From Marsupella aquatica (Eukaryota; Plantae; Marchantiophyta), in assembly GCA_973895155.1 (NCBI GenBank), contig OZ316898.1, forward strand, positions 2,914,480 through 2,978,479: 64,000 bases of DNA, given 5' to 3'. Of the stretch, positions 3,280 to 64,000 are shown one piece after another. How positions within the stretch are numbered: position 1 is the first letter of the stretch; every line of letters begins with the position of its first letter. Position numbers and translations under genes: made by a program. Under the pieces are notes generated by a model. It worked only from the letters and a program-made list of their open reading frames with translations, searched no databases and was not told the DNA's origin.

Positions 3280-4060
3280 TTTGTCTTTATTTAGAGTCAA
3301 TGTCAATTTTGTTTATCTTTGCTCCCCTTCCTATTTTTTGTCACCCTCAAGTGTGTTGTCTTTATTAATATATTTATTAAGAGTTAGGGTCTTGTATCAT
3401 ACTCAAGTGTGTTGTCCTTATTAATTGGCTTAGGTCAGCTGGCTAGGGGATTTGCCTGGAACGAAGAGGTCCAGGTTCAATCCCCCCTCCACACACTGGG
3501 GTGTGGACGGTATGTGTGTGTGGGTGGGATGGATTTTGTGGGTAGTGGATTGGAGTTCTGATTATCTGCTTGACCCCTGGTCGTCCACTTTGTGGCCCTG
3601 ATTTAATCCTCTCTCCTTCCTGGTGTGGGTCCCTCTCGGATCTGTTGGAGCTCACCCTGCTCTGGTTCCCTACAGAAAAACTGTCACATTGGGATGGGGG
3701 GAGTCTAATTGTATTTCCTCCCCATTTCCGTTCAAGACAAAAAAGAGTTAGGGTCTTTTGTCACCCTCACATGTGTTATCCTTATTACTATCTTCATGTA
3801 GAGTTAGGGTCTAGTGGCTTCACTCTAGATTGTAGGCCTTGACAATACTTTCCCTTTGCAAATTATTAGTAACATAGCTTTGTGTAGAGAATTTGCAAAT
3901 TATTAGTAAGATAGGTCTTGTGGTACAATGGTAACCCTGGTCCTAACTAGGGTTAGTCTAACCTAGCTTATACTTGTAGTATATCCTTATATCAGTAGGC
4001 CTGGCCTTGACAATACTTTCCCTTTGCAAATTATTAGTAAGATAACTTTGTGTAGAGAGG
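3280..4060 (+). repeat. Dispersed AT-rich repeat / probable non-autonomous TE fragment (host of the SINE-like insertion)
   Basis: Repeated GAGTTAGGGTCT and TCACCCTCA.(A)TGTGTT.TC.TTATT motifs, plus a duplicated GGCCTTGACAATACTTTCCCTTTGCAAATTATTAGTAA (3835, 4003). Related GAGTTA...CTTCACT(CT)AGA...GGCC segments occur at ~21660-21710 (reverse strand) and ~53560-53780. Confidence 0.6.
3427..3744 (+). mobile_element. tRNA-derived SINE-like element, copy 1
   Basis: Pol III A-box-like TAGGTCAGCTGG (3431-3442) and B-box GGTTCAATCCC (3474-3484) at tRNA-like spacing, then a GT-rich body and a 3' end TTTCCGTTCAAGAC followed by A6. Homologous along its length to 32081-32459 (minus strand). Confidence 0.72.
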
Positions 4061-4751: not shown

Positions 4752-4934
4752 CCTCTAATGCTCATGAACTGATGTAAAGTCCCTGTGGACGAGATTCGGG
4801 AAAGTACTGTCAAGGGTTTAGGGTGAAGCGTCCTCCAAAATTGATTGGTGATTTTGCTCTGCTTGAGCTGGGGAAGTTGGAAGTCTTTGCCTCCGTCACC
4901 TCCAGTGCTCTTATCTCACCGTCATCGTGCAGAA

Positions 4935-7306
4935 ATGGGCGACCAGTCATCTGACAGTGAAGTAGAGGAAGAGAGGACCGGAGAGGCGATTCCCAGCGGG
5001 AGCGATGAGAGTGACTCCGATGTAGATGCCGAGGTGCGTACATGGATAAATATTCACTTCCTCGGTTACTAAGCATGACCGTCCCAACATCTTCAGAGCT
5101 TGGTCACAGAACATTCGGTCACGGTTTTTGTAGGTTACATTATGGATTGATAGGTTCTCTCTTCGTTCCAGGAAGGTTTGCGAGAGCAGGTTGCTGATGT
5201 TCCTTTCGAAGAGCTTCAAAAAGCACGTTCAAACGGAGGAACATCTCTGTTTGCTCGGAATAAGCCAAAGATTGACACCAAGAGGGCCAATAAAAATAGG
5301 TGTGACTCTTCTTCTCCGTAGTGGTTCCAGTGATGTCGTCACGTGGGTCTGAAGTGAGCCTCAGATGCATCACATGAAGATAGATTTCAAGTATTTATAA
5401 TTGTATGCTGTCTCGTTTGCAAGCTAGGTTTGACGGTCTGAGTATGCGTCCTGTAAAGTTCTCTTGGCAAGGTCCTGCACTGCCTGGGTGATTATGCGAG
5501 ATTCAAGATCGTGGGTGGTAAAGTGTCCCGAGGGACATTTACATGTTGCCATGTGAGCGACTTCGGTTTAAGTTATAGGATATGAACGGCAAAGCTGATT
5601 TCCAAATTCTTTGTCGCAGACCTATGGAAATTACCAGCAGGAAACCAGTGCCAAGGTTTAGGGAGGTTATTCAGGCACCGAAAAGGGTACTCTCTTTTCC
5701 CTGTAAGACAATTATGGAATGCTGCCGAAAAAGCTTCTCATACGGATGGACCTCAAATGGCTCTCGTAATTTTCTGTTGTGTGCAGGTGATAAGAGATCC
5801 ACGTTTTGAATCACTCTGCGGGCAATTTGAAGAATCCAAGTAAGTTTAGGGTTTAGGGTTTAGGGTAAGTGGCCCGCTTCTGATATCGTCTAGATTACTG
5901 AGTTATTTGTCACCCGTGACTGTCGAACATCCCACTAAACAAGAAAATGAAGGGATTGCTGTAGTGTACATGATGATGGAGTCGAGCAGATTTCTGGGGA
6001 TAGCACAATATTTTGTGGACAATGATGACCTTCAGTTTAGGGTAGAATTGGAAGCTGTAGAATTGGAAACGAGGGATTGAAATTTGCTCTCATGCGTGTG
6101 CAGATTCAAATCAGCATACAGTTTTCTTTACAGTGAGCAACTTCCAGCCGAACGTCGGGTATAAAATTGCGACTGTGTTCCATGATAGACGAGACTATTC
6201 TGGGTCTCAGGCTGATGTTGAGAAAGAACGGAAATTATTCATTTGTATGTGTATTGTGTGCATGTTGGGAGGAGGGTGCGGGGCCTGAGTCGGTTATGTC
6301 GTCCTAAATGACGACGTCCGCTTAAAACATGTTATTCTGACCAACAGGCTTTATCTCCTCTTGTCAGGAAATTTACCTTGTCTAAATTGGTGATTCTCTC
6401 TCCATATGTTGCATAACTATATGCCGGATAACACTGCAGAAATCATATTTGTGCAGGAGCTACAAAAAACTCTTAATAAGAGAAAGGGAGATGAAGAAGC
6501 TGAAGCCCAGCTGACTTGGATTGTAAGTTTTGAAAACCACGAATATGGAGGAATATATAGCTTCCGAAGTCGTCGGTCTGTTTGTGCAACAGTTCCTGTT
6601 TCAGGTTTCAAATATTAGCCCTATTATTGGAGGTTTCTGAGGGCGCGTTATTGAATTGACAGGAAAAGCAACTGAAGGAAGAGGACGAGCGGAGAAAACA
6701 AGTAACAAAGACTGCTCAAATCAAGACGAAACAAAAGCAAGCTGTCACACAGGGAAAGAAACCATTTTATCTGAAGAAATGTATGTCTCAATCAACACAT
6801 CAATTTAATGATATCTTTTAGATGTAGATTTTATGAAATGAAAGTATGTATTACTGCCATGTTGACCTCCTCGGTACTCATTAGTTCAACTGAAATGCCT
6901 TTTGACATGTTGCAGTTGTAAGTGATGACCTTGACAGAATGTTTGCAATCAAGTGCAATATGTCTGTTTATAACTGATGCTGCTTTCTGTTGGCCCTTTG
7001 ATGGTGTCACAGCTGAGATGCGAAAGGAAGAACTGATTGACAAGTTCAAGGAGTTGAAGGTAAATAGTTTCGCAATAAATTTCGAATCACTGAAAGTCAT
7101 GGCCAAGTTCTTCGATTCACTATTGTTCTTAGGCCTTCAAGGGCATCTCAGTCTCTCATGAGGCATGTTTCGGAACAGCAAAAGCTAAATAGCCTCTTAA
7201 ATGTTTGCAGTCAAGTGGAAAATTGGAGAAGTACATGGCAAAGCGCCGGCGAAAGAACGCTGCTAAGGATCACAGATTCGTTCCCTACAGACGGAACGCT
7301 GATTGA
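4935..7306 (+). CDS. RRP36: rRNA biogenesis protein RRP36 (DUF947), 9 coding exons
   Basis: GT-AG exons join to MGDQSSDSEVEEE...DAE / EGLREQVADVPFEELQKAR...KRANKNR / PMEITSRKPVPRFREVIQAPKR / VIRDPRFESLCGQFEESK / FKSAYSFLYSEQLPAERR / ELQKTLNKRKG... / ...GKKPFYLKK / EMRKEELIDKFKELK / SSGKLEKYMAKRRRKNAAKDHRFVPYRRNAD*. The P.E.(T/S)S.KPV, RDPRF and KPFYLKK motifs are typical of RRP36. An acceptor (TGCAG, ending 4932) just before the ATG suggests a 5'UTR intron. Confidence 0.93.
5845..5865 (+). repeat. Interstitial plant telomeric repeat (TTTAGGG)3 in RRP36 intron 4
   Basis: Three perfect TTTAGGG units lie between two GTAAGT motifs (5840 and 5865). Confidence 0.9.
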
Positions 7307-55959: not shown

Positions 55960-58119
55960 TCAGAAGACGAGCAAATGCGGCTTTACTCCTGATTTGAGAC
56001 TGAACCTGGAGCTCAAGTAAGACTTCAGGTCGGGCACCTTTTCGATGATGGGAATCAGGTGAGCGTCCACATCAATCTGGTCACTCTTCCGCTCCTCAGA
56101 CAATGGTTGCTGCTCTTCTCCCTAAGATTGAGTTCCAACAAAATCTCGTGAGGCTTCGATGAGGTCGTGGCTCACTTCTAAAGGAATTTGATGTTCAACT
56201 ATGCAGGAATGTGCAGTTCCTGAGATATGAGCTCCAAAGCATAAAGAGGACTGATTCCGCTTACCTCGTCCTCGGCTCGGAAGAACGCGCTCTCTCCTTT
56301 CCTCTTCTTCACGACCTCTCGCTTGAAATAAGCATCGCTAAATTTCTCGAGGTCGTAATGCCCAATGGTGATTTTTGTTGAAGTGGAGATGACATACGAC
56401 TGGTTGACTCTTTTCAAAGGGACACCGTTCACCTTGAATGGCCCTGCGGATACAAAATAGAATGCAAACAGATTTTTCATCTCATTCAAAGACGAGCGAA
56501 CGAAATCCTCATAGCAGTCATAGGTCCGGTCGTAAGCGAGTCTAGGCACATCGTTGGACAAAGCAAGAGAGTGAATGGATGAATTCTTCTGTAGATTCCT
56601 GAAAGGACTTAGCCTTCCGAAGGTCCCTCATAACCGGAAATCTTAGCAATCCAGAAGAGCAACAAGGCGCCAGAAACAGGAGAAGAAATCGAGAAGATTT
56701 GAAATGACCGGAGACAAAAATCTGGCTGCAGTCGACAGCAAGAAAAAACAAATAGGACCGCCCGTCTGCTCATTCGATGACGGAAGCAGGAGTAGGAATG
56801 TCCTCATTTTCGTTCTTTTACTTCGAAAGTGCCTTTGGGAGGGATGGATTCAAATCAATTGTTTAAAAGTGGCAGATGGCCAGCAGTAAGGAGTAACCAG
56901 GCAAACTCACTACAGTAGCATTGCATCACAGAGAGAAAGAGAAAGAGAGAAAGAGAGAAAGAGAGCGTACCAGTGACTAGCAGCAGACCAGAATCCATCT
57001 GTTTTAGGAAAACTACCCTCTTGCCCTTGAAGTGTCCGGCTAAGAGGATCAACACAGTCCCGGGAGTAATATTAGGCCTGCACACGAACGAGTTTGCAAG
57101 CTTAGAATGACACATTTTGGCTCCAAGAGGAGTAACCATTGAGACAGAACGGAATAGTATTTTTCGATGTCGCAAGGTCCCGAACGCTTCTCGGCTTGAA
57201 CGGACGAAGGAATGTCTAATCACCCGCTAGAGAGGCATACAAGAGAGTATACACAGGGGCAAGATGCTCAACTGAGCTTGTAAATTTAGCCCGGATGCTC
57301 AGAAAGCAATATGCTAATCTTTTCGCTATCAAGTTCTCTCTTGCGTCTATTGTATGAGCACGCGTACAAATTTCCGGGTGGAGGTTTTCGATTCATATGG
57401 AAGGAGCTGCTGAAATCATACGGACCCAAGTACTATCGAAGTGTCAGACCCTTTGAGAGATAGAAGGCATTTCAACCGAGGGAGAAGAAAACTACTCTCC
57501 AGTCAGCAGCCCGCCAGGATGCTATTCTCTTCTCTCTCTTATAAATGTCATACCTGTATCGACATCGCCTGTAATGAGTCATAGCTTGGAGGGCAAGAAC
57601 TCTCTCAATGTCTACACAAATATCGAGAGAGAGGGATACGCACCGGAGCTTTGGAAAATTGACGACAGAATTCCTGTGCAGGGGCTTCGGGGCGTCGTCT
57701 GCCGGGTAGAACTTGGGATCCTTCTTCGCGGCGACTTGCTTGGGAGCTCGCTTGGGATGAGATGGGAGGTTTCCACCATTCTTAGCCTTGACAGCCCAAA
57801 CTCCTTTCTTGTGATACATTTCGGAGCGCGAGTAGCGTCCAATTCCTCGGACGACCTCATGATTCCTACTTCCTCGACTGAACCGGTTCAATCCCCTCAC
57901 CAAGGGCTTCATCCAAGTCGCTGCAGGAGAGAAGCTCTCTTTCCCGGCTTTCTCCAAGGGATTTTTCTGCTTCTTCTTATCCGCTGCTGCTTGTTCTCGA
58001 GCTTGCTTTTCGGCTCTCAACTTTTTGTTGGACCTCTCTTGCTCGAAGAAGGAGGAAGATAGTGCCTCGAGCACAGAGGCTCTTCGCTCCACCACCTTTG
58101 CTCCCTGTTCCCCAAGCAT
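55960..58119 (-). CDS. RPL6: 60S ribosomal protein L6 (eL6), divergent with N-terminal extension; exons 58119-57644, 57077-56971, 56443-56265, 56121-55960
   Basis: [117 protein letters not shown]. Intron phases are consistent. Confidence 0.93.
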
Positions 58120-60031: not shown

Positions 60032-63000
60032 TCATTGCCAGGGCCATTTGAAGCTCCCAGCTGATGCAGTCTCGAGGACTTTTGTTACACCATCTAGCAC
60101 TTCTTGCTCCTCCGATGGCGTAGACTCTGAGACAAGGCTCTCTACAGGCTTGTCCTCTAAGATGCCACTCGGAGGTGACGGTGTAGTTGGTGGCTTCAGA
60201 TCCGGGTACCTGGTGACGGCCAGACGACGGTCAGCGACGACATCGATTTTAAGAGAAGAAATGATCCCAAAGGGAACTGAGAGATGTTCAGAGCAATGCC
60301 AAGCTGGAAGCAGTGGAAAGTATCTGGAGCGAGTGGCCTGCGCAAAAGGCAGCGAGAGAAGAGCTGCATTCGGCTCTGGCAATGGCAATGAGGGTTACGT
60401 AAGACATGGTAGCGTGATCTTTACCTCCAGTATGGGGATAACGGCCTTGACGTTCGTGGCAAATCAGTAGAGCTCAATTGCGGCATAAGCGTGTTTTCTA
60501 CGACTGCTGTTGTCAAGGTTGTAACAGGCTCTGCCATAGGCTCAGGCAGCGGAGCCTCCTCCACCAACTCATTGAATGGCTCTGGCTCCGCCGTGGCTTC
60601 GTCGGCTTTTGAGGGGTTATTTTGTTCTCCCACTGCCGCTTCACTTGTTAGCACAGAACCGTTTCCTTCAACGCTTGAACTCGGAGGTTTAGGGTCGACA
60701 AATCTACAAGGTTCCACCACATCCAGCTCCCGAAGTCAGGACAGTATCACGTCACTGAGACATCCAATTGTAGGGGTCACGATACATGAAACCTCTTTGC
60801 GTAATAATTTGTCTCTGTTATGATCCAGGATGCCTTATTTTGCGAATATTGGATTCTTTCAGTTGGATGACGATCCTAATGAGGCTCCAAATTCTTCGGT
60901 TGAAGAAACAACAATTCAACAACTAATATCCTTCACTAATTCTTCATCTGATTTTCGTACGATGTCTCAGAGTTCATCTCCAGACCGAAGCTGGTCCTTC
61001 CATTGTCTCCTCGCCCAAAAAATCCTCAATAGAATTATTCCCGCACAAACAGAAACTCAACGCGCTCTAGCTGTCGATGAATCTAATCTTTCGATTCTAT
61101 CCTACATCTTGCATAAAGTCGGGCAATTCTTTACACCTTGTTGGCGAAGGGTTGCTCACCCGTTGTTCGAAGCGAGCTCCTCTGTGACCGATTTAGATAC
61201 AGTAACTGGAGCCGAAGGTGTAGGGGAAGACGGAGGCTTGAGGCCTGGATATCTGCACAGTCATGAACATCCAATATTCAGTCGAATGAGGAAAACAGGA
61301 ACGCAAGGTAGAATTGTTCTACTCTTCCAAGTTACAAAATCACCAATGTTTCCGACAGTCTTATATTCACCTGGTGTAAGGAGAAAGCGGTCTATTAGCA
61401 CGAGGGAGCTCGTCCTGGACGCTGGTACTCGAGAAGGAAACCATAGGAGCTTCAGTTGCAGTCTGATTCACGGGCTTTTGCCAGGGCCACAGGAAGGTTG
61501 CTGTTGCTGCTCTAGCTTTCTCCAAAGCGGCCTCCTCACGGGTCTTGGCATCTGCGGCTGCTTGAGCAGCTAACCGCTTCAGTTCTTCTTCTCCTGCTTG
61601 TCCAGCCTTTCCGTTGTCCGGAATTGAAGCTACGGGAGCCTTCTCTACCTCCCCATTTGCAAAATCAACAACCGCTTCAGCTACGTTTTCAAAAGCGTCG
61701 ATGAATTTAATTTCAGCTTCAATTGCTCGAACTTGAAAACCAGGAACTGGCTTCAGTTCTTCTTCACCTGCTTGTCCAGCCTTTCCATCCTCCGGAATTG
61801 AAGCTACGGGAGCCTTCTCCACCTTCCCTTTTGCAATATCAACAACCGCTTCAGCTACGTTTTCAAAAGCGTCGATGGCTTTAATTTCAGCTTCAATCGC
61901 TCGATTTTCAAAACCAGGAGGTGGCGGAGTTGGAGATGTTGGAGGCTTCAAGTCTGGGTACCTGCAGGATCACAATCGCAGCCAGTCAGTACTTCAGAGA
62001 AGATCGTACAATGGCATGGATTCGAGCACAACCAAGCATAAACTGACATATGAAAGGAGCAATCGTGCTGAAGAAACAGTGAAGACATCCACGCAGCTGA
62101 GCTATTTGAACTGCGGAAACTTAGTGTGAGTAATAATCCACACACAGCTGAGCAAATGGAACTAAATGCTTACTTTGCGTAAGGTGACAATGGTGTTGGA
62201 GTTCGGGGCAATTCGTCTGCTGTCTTTTCGACCGTTTCTTCACTCACTTCTGTCTCAGATTCTTTCTGCCATGGCCATCGGAAAGGTTTTGGGGCCTTCT
62301 TTTCGGTAAACACGTCCCCAGACGCTACCACCTGCACTTCCTTTACCTTTTCCTCTTCTGCGGCAATATTGGCTTTGGCTCCGGCCTCTTCCTTAGCCTT
62401 TGCTTCAGTTTGAGTTTCAGCTTTGAGCTTCTCTTCCTCTTCCTTTGCCTTTGCTTCAGCTGCCGCCTTGACCTTTTCTTCCTCTTCCTTCAGCTTTAAC
62501 CGTTCTTCCTCTCCCTTCTTCTCTGCAGCCTCTATCTTTGCACTTTCTTCTGCAGCTGCTTTGGCTTTAGCCGCATCCTTTGCTTTGTCCTCTGCCTCAA
62601 CCTTCGCCTTTTTCTCTGCTTCGGCCTTCGCCTTCCTGTCTGCCTCAGCCTTTGCCGTCAGTTCGGCTTCAGCCTTAGCTGCCCGTTCTGCTTTACCAGC
62701 GACCTCTGCTTCTTCAGCCTTCCGTTTCTCCTTAGCTTCAACCTTCTTAGCTTCTGCTTCTCTGATCGCCTTTATTTCTGCTTCCTTTTTGGCCTTTTCT
62801 TCCGCAGCCTTGGCCTTCGCTTCTGCTACTTTCTTGGCCTGCGCTTCCGCTCTTATTGCGGCAATAATGTCCTTTCTCTCATTGTCGCTTAAGCTGCATA
62901 TCCAAGTTCACTAGTTAGTGCATACTTTTCCAGGCTTGTGCCAGACTAATTACGGTCTTTACAACGAGGAAAACGGTGGAGTTGGCAAGTCTGAATCTGC

Positions 63001-63900
63001 CTGACGGAGAGAAATGAACTCACACTGCCACACAAAGAAGAGAGCAGCTATTCGACAGTTTCAGCTGCTAAAGGTAACAGTACAGAAATTTGTAAGACAA
63101 GAAAACTGCATCATCGTCGTTATCTCCTTATTGACGATTACGCTACGGGTGAGGTATGCGTTGGAGTGTGATAAGAACTGTTTTTAAATTGGATGGTGCA
63201 TTTGTTGAATATGAGTTTTCACTTTGAGGAATAAATGAGTTAAAGTTTGTTTTGATGACAATTGCTCAGCTAATGAGGGCAGTGTGATGAGAGAAGCGAA
63301 GGTCCGAAACATCAGGTAGAATTTAAGTCGTAAAGTTTCATCGTACGGGTAAAGTTTCAGATTGTATAGCGATTACAAATGCGAAAATCAGCCTCAACGA
63401 CAAAGATAAGCTGTTTCCTCACGCACACTCACGTCTTTCCTTCCCGAACGGCTACGAGAACGGCACCCTCGACAGCCTTCGCTTCTTTCGCAGCTTGGGC
63501 AGCTGCTTCGGCTCTGTAACGCAGTTCAGCCACTCTTTTTTCAAGTTCCTGTGTCTCTAACCGTGCCTCCTCTGCACTTTTCTTCGCTTCTTCTTCTCGT
63601 TCCTTAGCTGCAGTATATTCTCTTTGGAGTTTTTCCCGAATGGCTTGTGTCTTTGCTTGTTCTGCCGCGCGCTTCTCCTCAGCTGCTATACGCTCCTGCA
63701 GTATCATTTACTTATAATCAATTCAGGAAGGCGCAGGTACGATTTGCTACCAATCCACTTTACCAATCTTCAACAACTTCTTCCACTTATGAGTCCATTG
63801 CTAAAAAACAACACATTTGTAATCAAAGAGCCCTGGCTATAGTAACCTCTTCCTCCCGCTGTTTTGCTGCTTTCGCTTCATCTCTCTTTGCCAACTTCTC
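60032..63900 (-). CDS. 3' part of a Tic62/TROL-type FNR-tethering chloroplast protein (A/E/K-rich helical stalk plus 3 FNR-binding motifs); 5' end lies beyond the window. Exons 63900-63847, 63695-63433, 62893-62174, 61961-61371, 61252-61160, 60703-60425, 60209-60032
   Basis: Splicing restores LPRTPTPLSPYAK|YPDLKPPTSPTPP, LPRANRPLSPYTR|YPGLKPPSSPTPS and LPRTSRPLSPYWR|YPDLKPPTTPSPP, matching the S/P-rich PLSPY..Y.DLKPP.SP.P FNR-binding motif of Tic62 and TROL. The N-terminal domain (NAD(P)-binding vs rhodanese) is not visible, so no symbol is given. Confidence 0.8.
61577..61917 (-). repeat. Intra-exonic 174-bp (58-aa period) tandem duplication
   Basis: GFENRAIEAEIKAIDAFENVAEAVVDIAKGKVEKAPVASIPEDGKAGQAGEEELK and GFQVRAIEAEIKFIDAFENVAEAVVDFANGEVEKAPVASIPDNGKAGQAGEEELK; CTTCAGTTCTTCTTC occurs at 61577 and 61751. 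Confidence 0.95.
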
Positions 63901-64000
63901 CTGTAATATGGCAACCACAACAGTCTCATAAGGCAAAGCCCGGAAAACAGGTTGCAAAAAATATTTGGCAAAAACGCCGCTCGAGCTCAAAGATAGCAAA

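What the first reader, a model, noticed from the sequence alone, without database searches (positions are those of the whole stretch)
60032..62230. FNR-binding motifs built across identical phase-2 splice junctions: a modular exon cassette that could tune FNR-docking valency
Seen: three PLSPYx(K/R)|YPxLKPP(T/S)xP motifs, each cut by an intron at exactly the same phase-2 position. The internal exons (591, 93 and 279 nt) are all multiples of 3 and phase 2-2, so any left half-motif can join any right half-motif in frame. One exon begins with a degenerate half (FVDPKPPSSS). Established: this Ser/Pro-rich motif is how Tic62 and TROL tether ferredoxin-NADP+ reductase to chloroplast membranes. Inference: exon duplication built the array, and exon skipping could give isoforms with 1-3 functional sites or a crippled one, providing a splice-controlled rheostat for FNR tethering.
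Basis: partly seen in the sequence, partly recalled or inferred. Interest (0 to 1): 0.8.

Follow-up and report, generated by a model that had tools for sequence, protein, structure and literature searches.

The report
Intron-split FNR-docking motifs in liverwort TIC62
The stretch is the 3' half of a liverwort TIC62 gene whose three docking motifs for the photosynthetic enzyme FNR are each cut by an intron at the same spot; nine green-lineage species share this layout, which explains how the motif number changes, but splicing control of the number is untested here.

Summary
On the minus strand, three motifs (PLSPYx[K/R]|YPxLKPP[T/S][S/T]P) are each interrupted by a GT-AG phase-2 intron at the same codon position. 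The internal exons are 591, 93 and 279 nt. One junction joins a decayed right half (FVDPKPPSSS) to an exon end with no left half.

The gene is the orthologue of a Calypogeia fissa (liverwort) protein: 75% identity, shared RPL6e neighbour. That protein has the TIC62-type NAD(P)-binding domain, an Ala/Glu/Lys stalk and the same motifs.

The split is not special to this window. 32 of 33 TIC62 motifs in nine species (a Closterium alga, Sphagnum, two liverworts, two lycophytes, three angiosperms) carry the intron at this site. TROL carries it 1 nt downstream, in phase 0. Exon duplication as the builder of the array is well supported.

The "splice rheostat" is untested for this species. Annotated isoforms of Impatiens and Trifolium, checked against their loci, skip exactly such exons; a potato isoform has a deletion with the same borders. 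The symmetric phases are equally explained as a by-product of duplication.

The motif's presence in bryophytes and an alga contradicts published statements that it is exclusive to vascular plants.

The parts
63847..63900 (-). 54-nt phase 0-0 mini-exon of the Ala/Glu/Lys stalk (EKLAKRDEAKAAKQREEE). This is the first exon of the gene inside the window; the NAD(P)-binding domain lies beyond 64000.
   Evidence: Acceptor TTACAG|GAG and donor GAG|GTTACT were read. It aligns to the 54-nt exons of the Calypogeia orthologue.
63433..63695 (-). Stalk exon (ERIAAEEK...VREGK). It ends in a phase-2 donor at REGK[T]|LSD.
   Evidence: It is 88% identical in DNA to L001. The same phase-2 intron is present in Calypogeia, Diphasiastrum, Closterium and Selaginella.
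62174..62893 (-). Exon a: rest of the stalk, FRWPWQ (62283-62266), and left half of motif 1 (PLSPYA, 62193-62176, plus 2 nt of the split Lys codon).
61962..62173 (-). Intron 1, phase 2, GTAAGC...CTGCAG. It splits motif 1.
   Evidence: The orthologous Calypogeia intron is also 212 nt. The intron is 70% identical to L001, against 83-90% for the exons.
61371..61961 (-). Exon b (591 nt, phase 2-2). It holds the right half of motif 1 (YPDLKPPTSPTP, 61960-61925), a 174-nt in-frame tandem duplication (61576-61923), FLWPWQ (61495-61478), and the left half of motif 2 (PLSPYT, 61390-61373).
61253..61370 (-). Intron 2, phase 2, GTGAAT...GTGCAG. It splits motif 2.
61160..61252 (-). Exon c (93 nt, phase 2-2). 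It holds the right half of motif 2 (YPGLKPPSSPTP) and ends in ...ELASNNG with no left half. It is the most conserved exon, 90% identical in DNA to Calypogeia.
60704..61159 (-). Intron 3, phase 2, GTGAGC...TTGTAG.
60425..60703 (-). Exon d (279 nt, phase 2-2). It starts with the relic right half FVDPKPPSSS (60702-60673), where Calypogeia has LVNLKPPSSPTPSP. It has lost the WPW element by a 10-residue deletion. It ends with the left half of motif 3 (PLSPYW, 60444-60427).
60210..60424 (-). Intron 4, phase 2, GTAAAG...CACCAG. It splits motif 3.
60032..60209 (-). Last coding exon. It holds the right half of motif 3 (YPDLKPPTTPSP, 60208-60173), the C-terminal FKWPWQ (60052-60035) and the stop TGA (60034-60032).

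Best explanation
This is the 3' part of the TIC62 gene of a leafy liverwort related to Calypogeia. The encoded C-terminus is the FNR-docking module known from vascular-plant TIC62: three Ser/Pro-rich motifs (PLSPYxxYPxLKPPxxPxP). By homology, each is expected to form a polyproline-II stretch that holds ferredoxin-NADP+ reductase at chloroplast membranes.

Each motif is encoded across an exon junction. The left half ends one exon and the right half starts the next, with a phase-2 intron inside the codon before the second Tyr. The unit of evolution is therefore an internal 2-2 exon (right half, spacer, left half). Tandem duplication or loss of such an exon adds or removes exactly one motif in frame. 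This layout is older than land plants.

The default product here most likely contains all exons, giving three intact motifs plus one decaying relic. Skipping of 2-2 exons is mechanically possible and would change the number of sites, but it is not shown for this species.

Shown: the anatomy, the orthology, the conservation of the intron position, and exon-wise copy-number change. Inferred: FNR binding in liverworts and constitutive splicing.
For: Anatomy:
- Junctions, phases and exon sizes were read directly.

Orthology:
- A search with exon b alone against 1.84 billion representatives gave 4 hits. Two are full-length proteins with Pfam NAD_binding_10/NmrA domains and the same C-terminal motifs: Calypogeia fissa CAM6086535.1 and Diphasiastrum complanatum KAJ7570684.1.
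- The locally spliced model is 75.6% identical to the Calypogeia protein over 627 columns.
- The Calypogeia locus has RPL6e downstream, as in the window.

Intron position, mapped by exact protein-to-genome chaining (window). Motifs split at SPYx[x]|Y in phase 2:
- Window 3/3, Calypogeia 3/3, Sphagnum 2/2, Closterium 3/4.
- Diphasiastrum 3/3, Selaginella 3/3.
- Arabidopsis lyrata 4/4, Impatiens 6/6, Trifolium 5/5.
- TROL of Lolium (2/2) and Tarenaya (1/1) is split 1 nt downstream, in phase 0.

Age of the copies:
- The three right halves are 60-70% alike in DNA, and no intron similarity between units was detected, so the copies are old.
- All three motifs are nearly invariant between the two liverworts, while the relic has a 7-residue deletion.

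Motif identity:
- It matches the consensus in PMC1847441 and the TIC62 peptide KTEQPLSPYTAYDDLKPPSSPSPTKP of PDB 3MHP.
Against: - The N-terminal NAD(P)-binding domain and the transit peptide lie outside the window, so full TIC62 architecture is known only through the orthologue.
- No FNR-binding test was possible.
- Motif 2 has Gly where the consensus has Asp/Glu.
- No transcript evidence for this species was available, so 'constitutive' is an assumption. It rests on the single annotated product in Calypogeia and on purifying selection on all three motifs.
- Annotated exon-skipping isoforms in angiosperms show that the default-only view may be incomplete.
Confidence: 0.75

Rival explanations
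1. One reading: the 2-2 exons are cassette exons. Regulated skipping produces isoforms with one to three intact FNR sites, or a crippled chimera such as PLSPYTR|FVDPKPPSSS. This would tune how much FNR is tethered.
For: - All internal exons are 2-2 and multiples of 3, so every skip is in frame.
- Annotated isoforms skip exactly such exons, as checked against their loci. Impatiens X5 lacks one 120-nt exon, joining RPLSPYYS to YDDLKPP. Impatiens X6 lacks two exons (87 residues). Trifolium repens variant 2 lacks two exons (158 residues, five motifs down to three with the wider pattern) in both homeologues.
- Potato M1AEX8 lacks 174 residues with the same kind of borders, but no potato locus was fetched to check the exons.
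- Solanum X2 isoforms lack seven residues that hold the left half of one motif, as an alternative donor would give.
Against: - There are no transcript data for this species.
- The only annotated product of the Calypogeia gene at the syntenic locus (P0001) holds all exons.
- Introns are only 70-77% identical between the two liverworts, with no sign of the extra conservation often seen around regulated exons.
- Symmetric phase is required for any tandem exon duplication to survive, so it is expected without regulation.
- Isoform models in near-identical repeat arrays can come from mis-mapped reads.
- From general knowledge, intron retention rather than exon skipping dominates plant alternative splicing.
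- No paper in the searchable library links TIC62 to alternative splicing.
Confidence: 0.12
2. The motifs in non-vascular plants do not dock FNR. They serve another partner or act as a generic proline-rich linker, and FNR docking was acquired later in vascular plants, as the literature assumes.
For: - Published statements say the FNR-binding motif is exclusive to vascular plants (PMC1847441; PMC5296341).
- Non-seed versions carry an extra WPW element and a long stalk that angiosperm TIC62 lacks, so the module is not identical.
Against: - The core of the motif is nearly the same from Closterium to pea.
- It has been kept under selection in three copies between the two liverworts.
- Such conservation of a 17-20-residue linear motif across the green lineage is most simply explained by the same partner.
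Confidence: 0.1
3. The window gene is not TIC62 but a separate stalk-plus-motif protein without a dehydrogenase domain.
For: No NAD(P)-binding domain lies inside the window, and Pfam finds nothing in the exons present.
Against: - DNA upstream of the stalk (window 63987-63762) still aligns with Calypogeia locus positions 6782-6999. That stretch lies downstream of the exons for the NAD(P)-binding domain in the same gene.
- Every full-length relative found has the domain.
Confidence: 0.03

Closest known systems
TIC62 of vascular plants (pea, Arabidopsis At3g18890)
   Same: - The same C-terminal repeated motif: S-P-Y-x2-Y-x-[D/E]-L-K-P-P-[S/T]-[S/T]-P-[S/T]-P.
- The same phase-2 intron inside every motif (A. 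lyrata 4/4, Trifolium 5/5, Impatiens 6/6).
- The orthologue carries the NAD_binding_10/NmrA domain, with several shared intron positions in that domain.
   Different: - The organism is a liverwort, a group the literature says lacks the module.
- A stalk of more than 300 Ala/Glu/Lys-rich residues lies between the domain and the motifs.
- A WPW(Q/E) element accompanies the motifs and ends the protein.
- Angiosperm TIC62 has neither of these two features.
TROL (thylakoid rhodanese-like protein)
   Same: It carries the same FNR-binding motif near its C-terminus. The motif is also split by an intron between the two halves, and grasses have two copies separated by a symmetric exon.
   Different: - TROL has a rhodanese domain and membrane helices, not an NAD(P)-binding domain.
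- Its intron is phase 0 (PLSPYAS|YPDLKPP), 1 nt downstream of the TIC62 site.
- The window gene has phase-2 introns and a TIC62 orthologue, so it is not TROL.
Long-form TIC62 of non-seed streptophytes (Calypogeia P0001/P0021, Sphagnum P0006/P0042, Diphasiastrum P0004, Selaginella P0116, ferns P0076/P0077/P0080, Closterium P0067)
   Same: The architecture is identical: domain, charged stalk with a conserved phase-2 intron at EG[K/R]x|L[S/T], then two to four units of WPW, linker and split motif. In most of them a WPW also sits at or next to the C-terminus (C-terminus of Selaginella X1).
   Different: - These are unnamed database proteins ('unnamed protein product', 'titin homolog'), and I found no description of them in the searchable papers.
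- The window copy has its own 174-nt in-frame duplication, and it has lost one WPW.
Repeat arrays built from symmetric exons (general principle of exon duplication and shuffling; my own knowledge)
   Same: Internal exons of one phase class, with lengths that are multiples of 3, allow in-frame duplication, loss and skipping.
   Different: Here the functional unit (a short linear docking motif) is not inside an exon. It is created at the exon junction, so each exon carries the end of one site and the start of the next.

Membership tests
TIC62 | C-terminal repeats matching S-P-Y-x(2)-Y-x-[D/E]-L-K-P(2)-[S/T/A]-[S/T]-P-[S/T]-P | tested here: met
   Motifs 1 and 3 match every position. Motif 2 has Gly at the D/E position (consensus from PMC1847441; peptide of PDB 3MHP).
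TIC62 | N-terminal NAD(P)-binding (extended SDR, NmrA-like) domain | tested here: inconclusive
   The domain lies beyond the window edge. The syntenic orthologue, 75% identical, has NAD_binding_10 at E=2.5e-27. DNA collinearity continues upstream to the window edge.
TIC62 | Orthology to recognised TIC62 genes | tested here: met
   [quoted passage not shown] The motif introns are shared; the introns shared within the NAD(P)-binding domain were mapped in the Calypogeia orthologue, not in the window.
TIC62 | Binding of leaf-type FNR by the motif (polyproline-II, pH dependent) | not testable with these tools
Only bacterial, archaeal and phage references are allowed.
TIC62 | Chloroplast transit peptide and inner-envelope or thylakoid association | not testable with these tools
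   The N-terminus lies outside the window.
TROL | Rhodanese-like domain with membrane helices | tested here: not met
   No Pfam hit in any window exon. The orthologue has an NAD(P)-binding domain instead.
TROL | Motif intron in phase 0 (as seen in the two TROL genes examined) | tested here: not met
   The window introns are phase 2. Lolium and Tarenaya TROL introns are phase 0.
Regulated cassette-exon array | Transcripts with and without the exon in the same species | not testable with these tools
   No transcript data for this species. Only annotated isoforms in Impatiens, Trifolium and Solanum.
Regulated cassette-exon array | Symmetric phase and length divisible by 3 | tested here: met
   591, 93 and 279 nt, all 2-2.

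The most novel reading that the evidence does not exclude
Placing the docking motif on a splice junction is functional, not just historical. Streptophytes would set the number of FNR sites on TIC62 by skipping 2-2 exons, or by retaining the motif introns. Because the donors read GTAA or GTGA in phase 2, a retained intron gives a stop codon right after the left half. FNR tethering would then be adjusted post-transcriptionally, and this control would be as old as the module itself (before land plants).
Probability: 0.12. Interest if true: 0.75.

Novelty: new variant of a known kind. Interest (0 to 1): 0.5.

Why it matters
FNR tethering by TIC62 and TROL is treated in the literature as an invention of vascular plants. 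Here the same motif array sits in a liverwort gene. Relatives with the array occur in Sphagnum and in a zygnematophyte alga, so the module probably predates land plants and was lost in some mosses such as Physcomitrella.

The conserved intron inside the motif gives a simple genetic explanation for why motif number varies from two to six or more among species: one exon gained or lost equals one site. The TROL intron lies 1 nt away from the TIC62 site, which raises the possibility, not tested here, that the two families acquired the module in a related way.

It also defines a clean, testable set of splice junctions and chimeric peptides for asking whether the number of FNR sites is regulated. 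The WPW element and the charged stalk are unexplained parts of the ancestral module that angiosperm work has never had to consider.

Tried and rejected
- Pfam on each exon translation gave nothing above threshold.
- The word-index protein search with exon b found nothing, because only proteins of 108-343 residues were candidates. This says nothing about relatives.
- The protein atlas gave no usable hit.
- My first protein-to-genome mapper, based on ungapped tblastn with 100% identity, lost most exons. I replaced it with exact-match chaining.
- My first model of the 5'-most exon in the window (64000-63847, 'LLSLSSSG...') was wrong. Alignment to the Calypogeia protein shows that only 63900-63847 is exon.
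- The loci of Impatiens isoform X4 and the Ceratopteris protein are not on record.
- Two paper searches were too loose and returned only general bryophyte or alga papers.
- I considered whether the stop codon overlapping the donor of the 93-nt exon is a special 'dual-use' design and rejected it. Any phase-2 intron with a GTAA or GTGA donor gives TAA or TGA in frame. This holds for 20 of 25 motif introns in the other species.
- I looked for extra intron conservation near the exons as a sign of regulated splicing and found none.
- The joined (spliced) protein was never sent to any database, fold or complex tool. Searches were done exon by exon by reference. The joined model was assembled only inside local scripts, to check the reading frame and to align it with proteins already fetched.
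Full report
**1. What is in the sequence**

The gene lies on the minus strand.
- Donors are at 62174 (AA|GTAAGC), 61371 (AG|GTGAAT), 61160 (GG|GTGAGC) and 60425 (AG|GTAAAG).
- Acceptors are at 61961, 61252, 60703 and 60209, each preceded by AG.
- All four introns are phase 2. The internal exons are 591, 93 and 279 nt.

Joined in a local script, the junctions read:
- ...LPRTPTPLSPYA[K]YPDLKPPTSPTPPPP
- ...LPRANRPLSPYT[R]YPGLKPPSSPTPSAP
- ...ELASNN[G]FVDPKPPSSS
- ...LPRTSRPLSPYW[R]YPDLKPPTTPSPPSG

The protein ends with FKWPWQ and the stop codon at 60034-60032.

The half motifs are far above chance. PLSPY occurs 4 times in the six-frame translation of the window against 0.07 in shuffles. [YF]..LKPP occurs 3 times against 0.1. 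The three pairs lie in order in this gene.

Upstream in the window the gene continues with Ala/Glu/Lys-rich exons at 62893-62174, 63695-63433 and 63900-63847. The start of the gene is beyond position 64000.

**2. What gene it is**

Pfam finds nothing in the exons. The length-restricted word search with exon b was blank.

The exhaustive search with exon b alone (window:61373-61960:-) found four proteins.
- Two are full-length. P0001 is Calypogeia fissa CAM6086535.1, a leafy liverwort. P0004 is Diphasiastrum complanatum KAJ7570684.1, a lycophyte.
- Both have the NAD_binding_10/NmrA domain of TIC62, a charged stalk and the same motifs.
- The other two hits (P0002, P0003) are single-exon ORFs from short contigs. 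They end or begin exactly at the motif junction.

The locally spliced window model is 75.6% identical to P0001 over 627 columns. The Calypogeia locus has RPL6e just downstream, as the window has at about 57.5-58.1 kb. DNA is alignable through introns at about 70% identity. The window therefore comes from a liverwort fairly close to Calypogeia, and the gene is its TIC62 orthologue.

The joined protein was not sent to any search, fold or complex tool. It was used only in local scripts.

**3. The motif**

The published consensus is S-P-Y-x(2)-Y-x-[D/E]-L-K-P(2)-[S/T/A]-[S/T]-P-[S/T]-P (PMC1847441). The peptide deposited as 'TIC62_peptide' in PDB entry 3MHP is KTEQPLSPYTAYDDLKPPSSPSPTKP. From my own knowledge, that entry is the complex with FNR. 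Motifs 1 and 3 fit the consensus at every position. Motif 2 has Gly for Asp/Glu.

All three motifs are almost unchanged between the two liverworts, whereas the linkers vary and carry indels. This argues that all three are under selection.

The fourth junction is a relic.
- Calypogeia still reads NG|LVNLKPPSSPTPSP.
- The window has FVDPKPPSS followed by a 7-residue deletion.
- The window has also lost the FFWPWH element of that unit through a 10-residue deletion.

**4. The intron is a family character, not a local curiosity**

I mapped annotated proteins onto their genomic loci by exact-match chaining and junction solving.

| Species | Motifs split at SPYx[x]\|Y, phase 2 |
|---|---|
| Window | 3/3 |
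| Calypogeia | 3/3 |
| Sphagnum compactum | 2/2 |
| Closterium sp. (Zygnematophyceae) | 3/4 (the last, divergent motif is unsplit) |
| Diphasiastrum | 3/3 |
| Selaginella | 3/3 |
| Arabidopsis lyrata | 4/4 |
| Impatiens glandulifera | 6/6 |
| Trifolium repens | 5/5 |

That makes 32 of 33 motifs.

In Selaginella and Impatiens the other introns of the C-terminal region, apart from three phase-1 introns in Impatiens, are also phase 2. Some of these follow degenerate left halves such as DESPTT[I].

TROL, found with a 45-residue motif query, is also split between the halves. There the intron is phase 0, 1 nt downstream (PLSPYAS|YPDLKPP). This holds in Lolium (two motifs, with a 180-nt 0-0 exon between them) and in Tarenaya.

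So the unit that duplicates is an exon carrying 'right half, spacer, left half'. Copy-number differences between species come in whole exons. In the window the three right halves are only 60-70% alike in DNA, and no intron similarity between units was detected. The copies are therefore old. The only recent duplication is a 174-nt in-frame repeat inside exon b, which Calypogeia lacks.

**5. The splicing idea**

The arithmetic is right: every skip of exons b, c and d, alone or together, stays in frame.
- Skipping b gives L1-R2.
- Skipping c gives the crippled PLSPYTR|FVDPKPPSSS.
- Skipping c and d gives L2-R3.
- Skipping b, c and d gives a single site.

I could not reach any transcript data for this species.

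Indirect evidence for the idea comes from annotated isoforms elsewhere, which differ by exactly such exons (checked against the loci).
- Impatiens X5 lacks the 120-nt exon between the first two motifs.
- Impatiens X6 lacks two exons (261 nt).
- Trifolium repens 'variant 2' lacks two exons (474 nt) in both homeologues.
- Potato M1AEX8 lacks 174 residues with the same borders; no potato locus was fetched, so its exons were not checked.
- Solanum X2 isoforms lack seven residues that hold the left half of one motif, as an alternative donor would give.

Evidence against, or neutral:
- The only annotated product of the Calypogeia gene at the syntenic locus holds all exons.
- Intron identity between the liverworts (70-77%) shows no extra conservation.
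- Symmetric phase is a precondition for surviving duplication.
- Isoform models in repeat arrays are error-prone.
- No searchable paper connects TIC62 with alternative splicing.

I therefore rate regulated valency control in this species at about 0.12.

A side observation concerns intron retention. Because the introns are phase 2 and the donors read GTAA or GTGA, retention of any of the four puts TAA or TGA directly after the split codon. This is true of 20 of 25 motif introns in the other species as well. It is a by-product of the donor consensus rather than a special design.

**6. Comparison with the literature**

Balsera et al. 2007 (PMC1847441) state that the FNR-binding module is found only in vascular plants. 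They found only a short TIC62 in Physcomitrella. A 2017 review repeats that the motif is exclusive to vascular plants (PMC5296341). A 2026 preprint still describes TIC62/TROL tethering as a higher-plant strategy.

The data here show the module in several non-vascular lineages.
- Two liverworts: the window and Calypogeia.
- Sphagnum: the genome model P0042, plus longer JGI sequences P0006 and P0122 with the stalk.
- Closterium, on a 3.9-Mb contig with typical short introns.

I found no paper in the searchable library that reports this, or that reports the intron position. Subscription journals are not covered, so earlier reports cannot be excluded.

**7. Verdict**

The gene is a TIC62 orthologue of the ancestral long form, and exon duplication is the well-supported origin of the array. 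The splice-rheostat idea remains a reasonable but unsupported hypothesis for this species, with database precedent in angiosperms. FNR binding in liverworts is inferred, not tested.

Noticed in passing
window 62283-62266, 61495-61478, 60052-60035 (minus strand); also P0001, P0004, P0006, P0042, P0067, P0005, P0010, P0076, P0077, P0080: A conserved F/L-x-W-P-W-(Q/E/H/K) element lies about 30-45 residues upstream of most FNR motifs and, in most of these proteins, at or next to the C-terminus in non-seed streptophytes. None of about 60 angiosperm TIC62 hits has it. Its function is unknown.
   Followed up: partly
window 63900-62300 (minus strand): A stalk of more than 300 Ala/Glu/Lys-rich residues precedes the motifs. 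Its phase-2 intron at REGK[T]|LSD (donor 63433, acceptor 62893) is conserved in Calypogeia, Diphasiastrum, Selaginella and Closterium. Angiosperm TIC62 has no stalk.
   Followed up: partly
window 61576-61923: A 174-nt (58-codon) in-frame tandem duplication lies inside exon b, with 91% identity between copies. It is absent from the Calypogeia orthologue, so it is recent and specific to this lineage. It does not include a motif.
   Followed up: yes
window 63847-63900; L001 6872-6925 and 7133-7186: The 54-nt 0-0 mini-exon (EKLAK..AAKQREEE) is present twice in Calypogeia but apparently once in the window part. This is another exon-level copy-number change in the same gene.
   Followed up: partly
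L006 (Lolium TROL) 3587-3670 and 3851-3967; L007 (Tarenaya TROL) 2443-2718: TROL motifs are split by a phase-0 intron 1 nt downstream of the TIC62 phase-2 site. Grass TROL has two motifs separated by a 180-nt 0-0 exon.
   Followed up: yes
window donors 62174, 61371, 61160, 60425: Retention of any of these introns gives an in-frame TAA or TGA immediately after the split codon. This is a generic result of phase 2 combined with GTAA or GTGA donors, and it is seen at 20 of 25 motif introns in other species.
   Followed up: yes
L003 (Sphagnum compactum) 4899-7068; P0006, P0122: The annotated Sphagnum model jumps over about 490 residues of stalk that the JGI sequences P0006 and P0122 contain. This is either an annotation gap or a stalk-less isoform.
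   Followed up: partly
L004 (Closterium), residue 1029 of P0067: The fourth, divergent motif (PLSPYTMFPDLRPPSSP) is the only one of 33 examined that is not split by an intron.
   Followed up: no
window 56199-58119 (minus strand): A 60S ribosomal protein L6e gene lies downstream of TIC62 on the same strand, as in Calypogeia fissa (L001 13610 onward). DNA identity is about 79%.
   Followed up: partly
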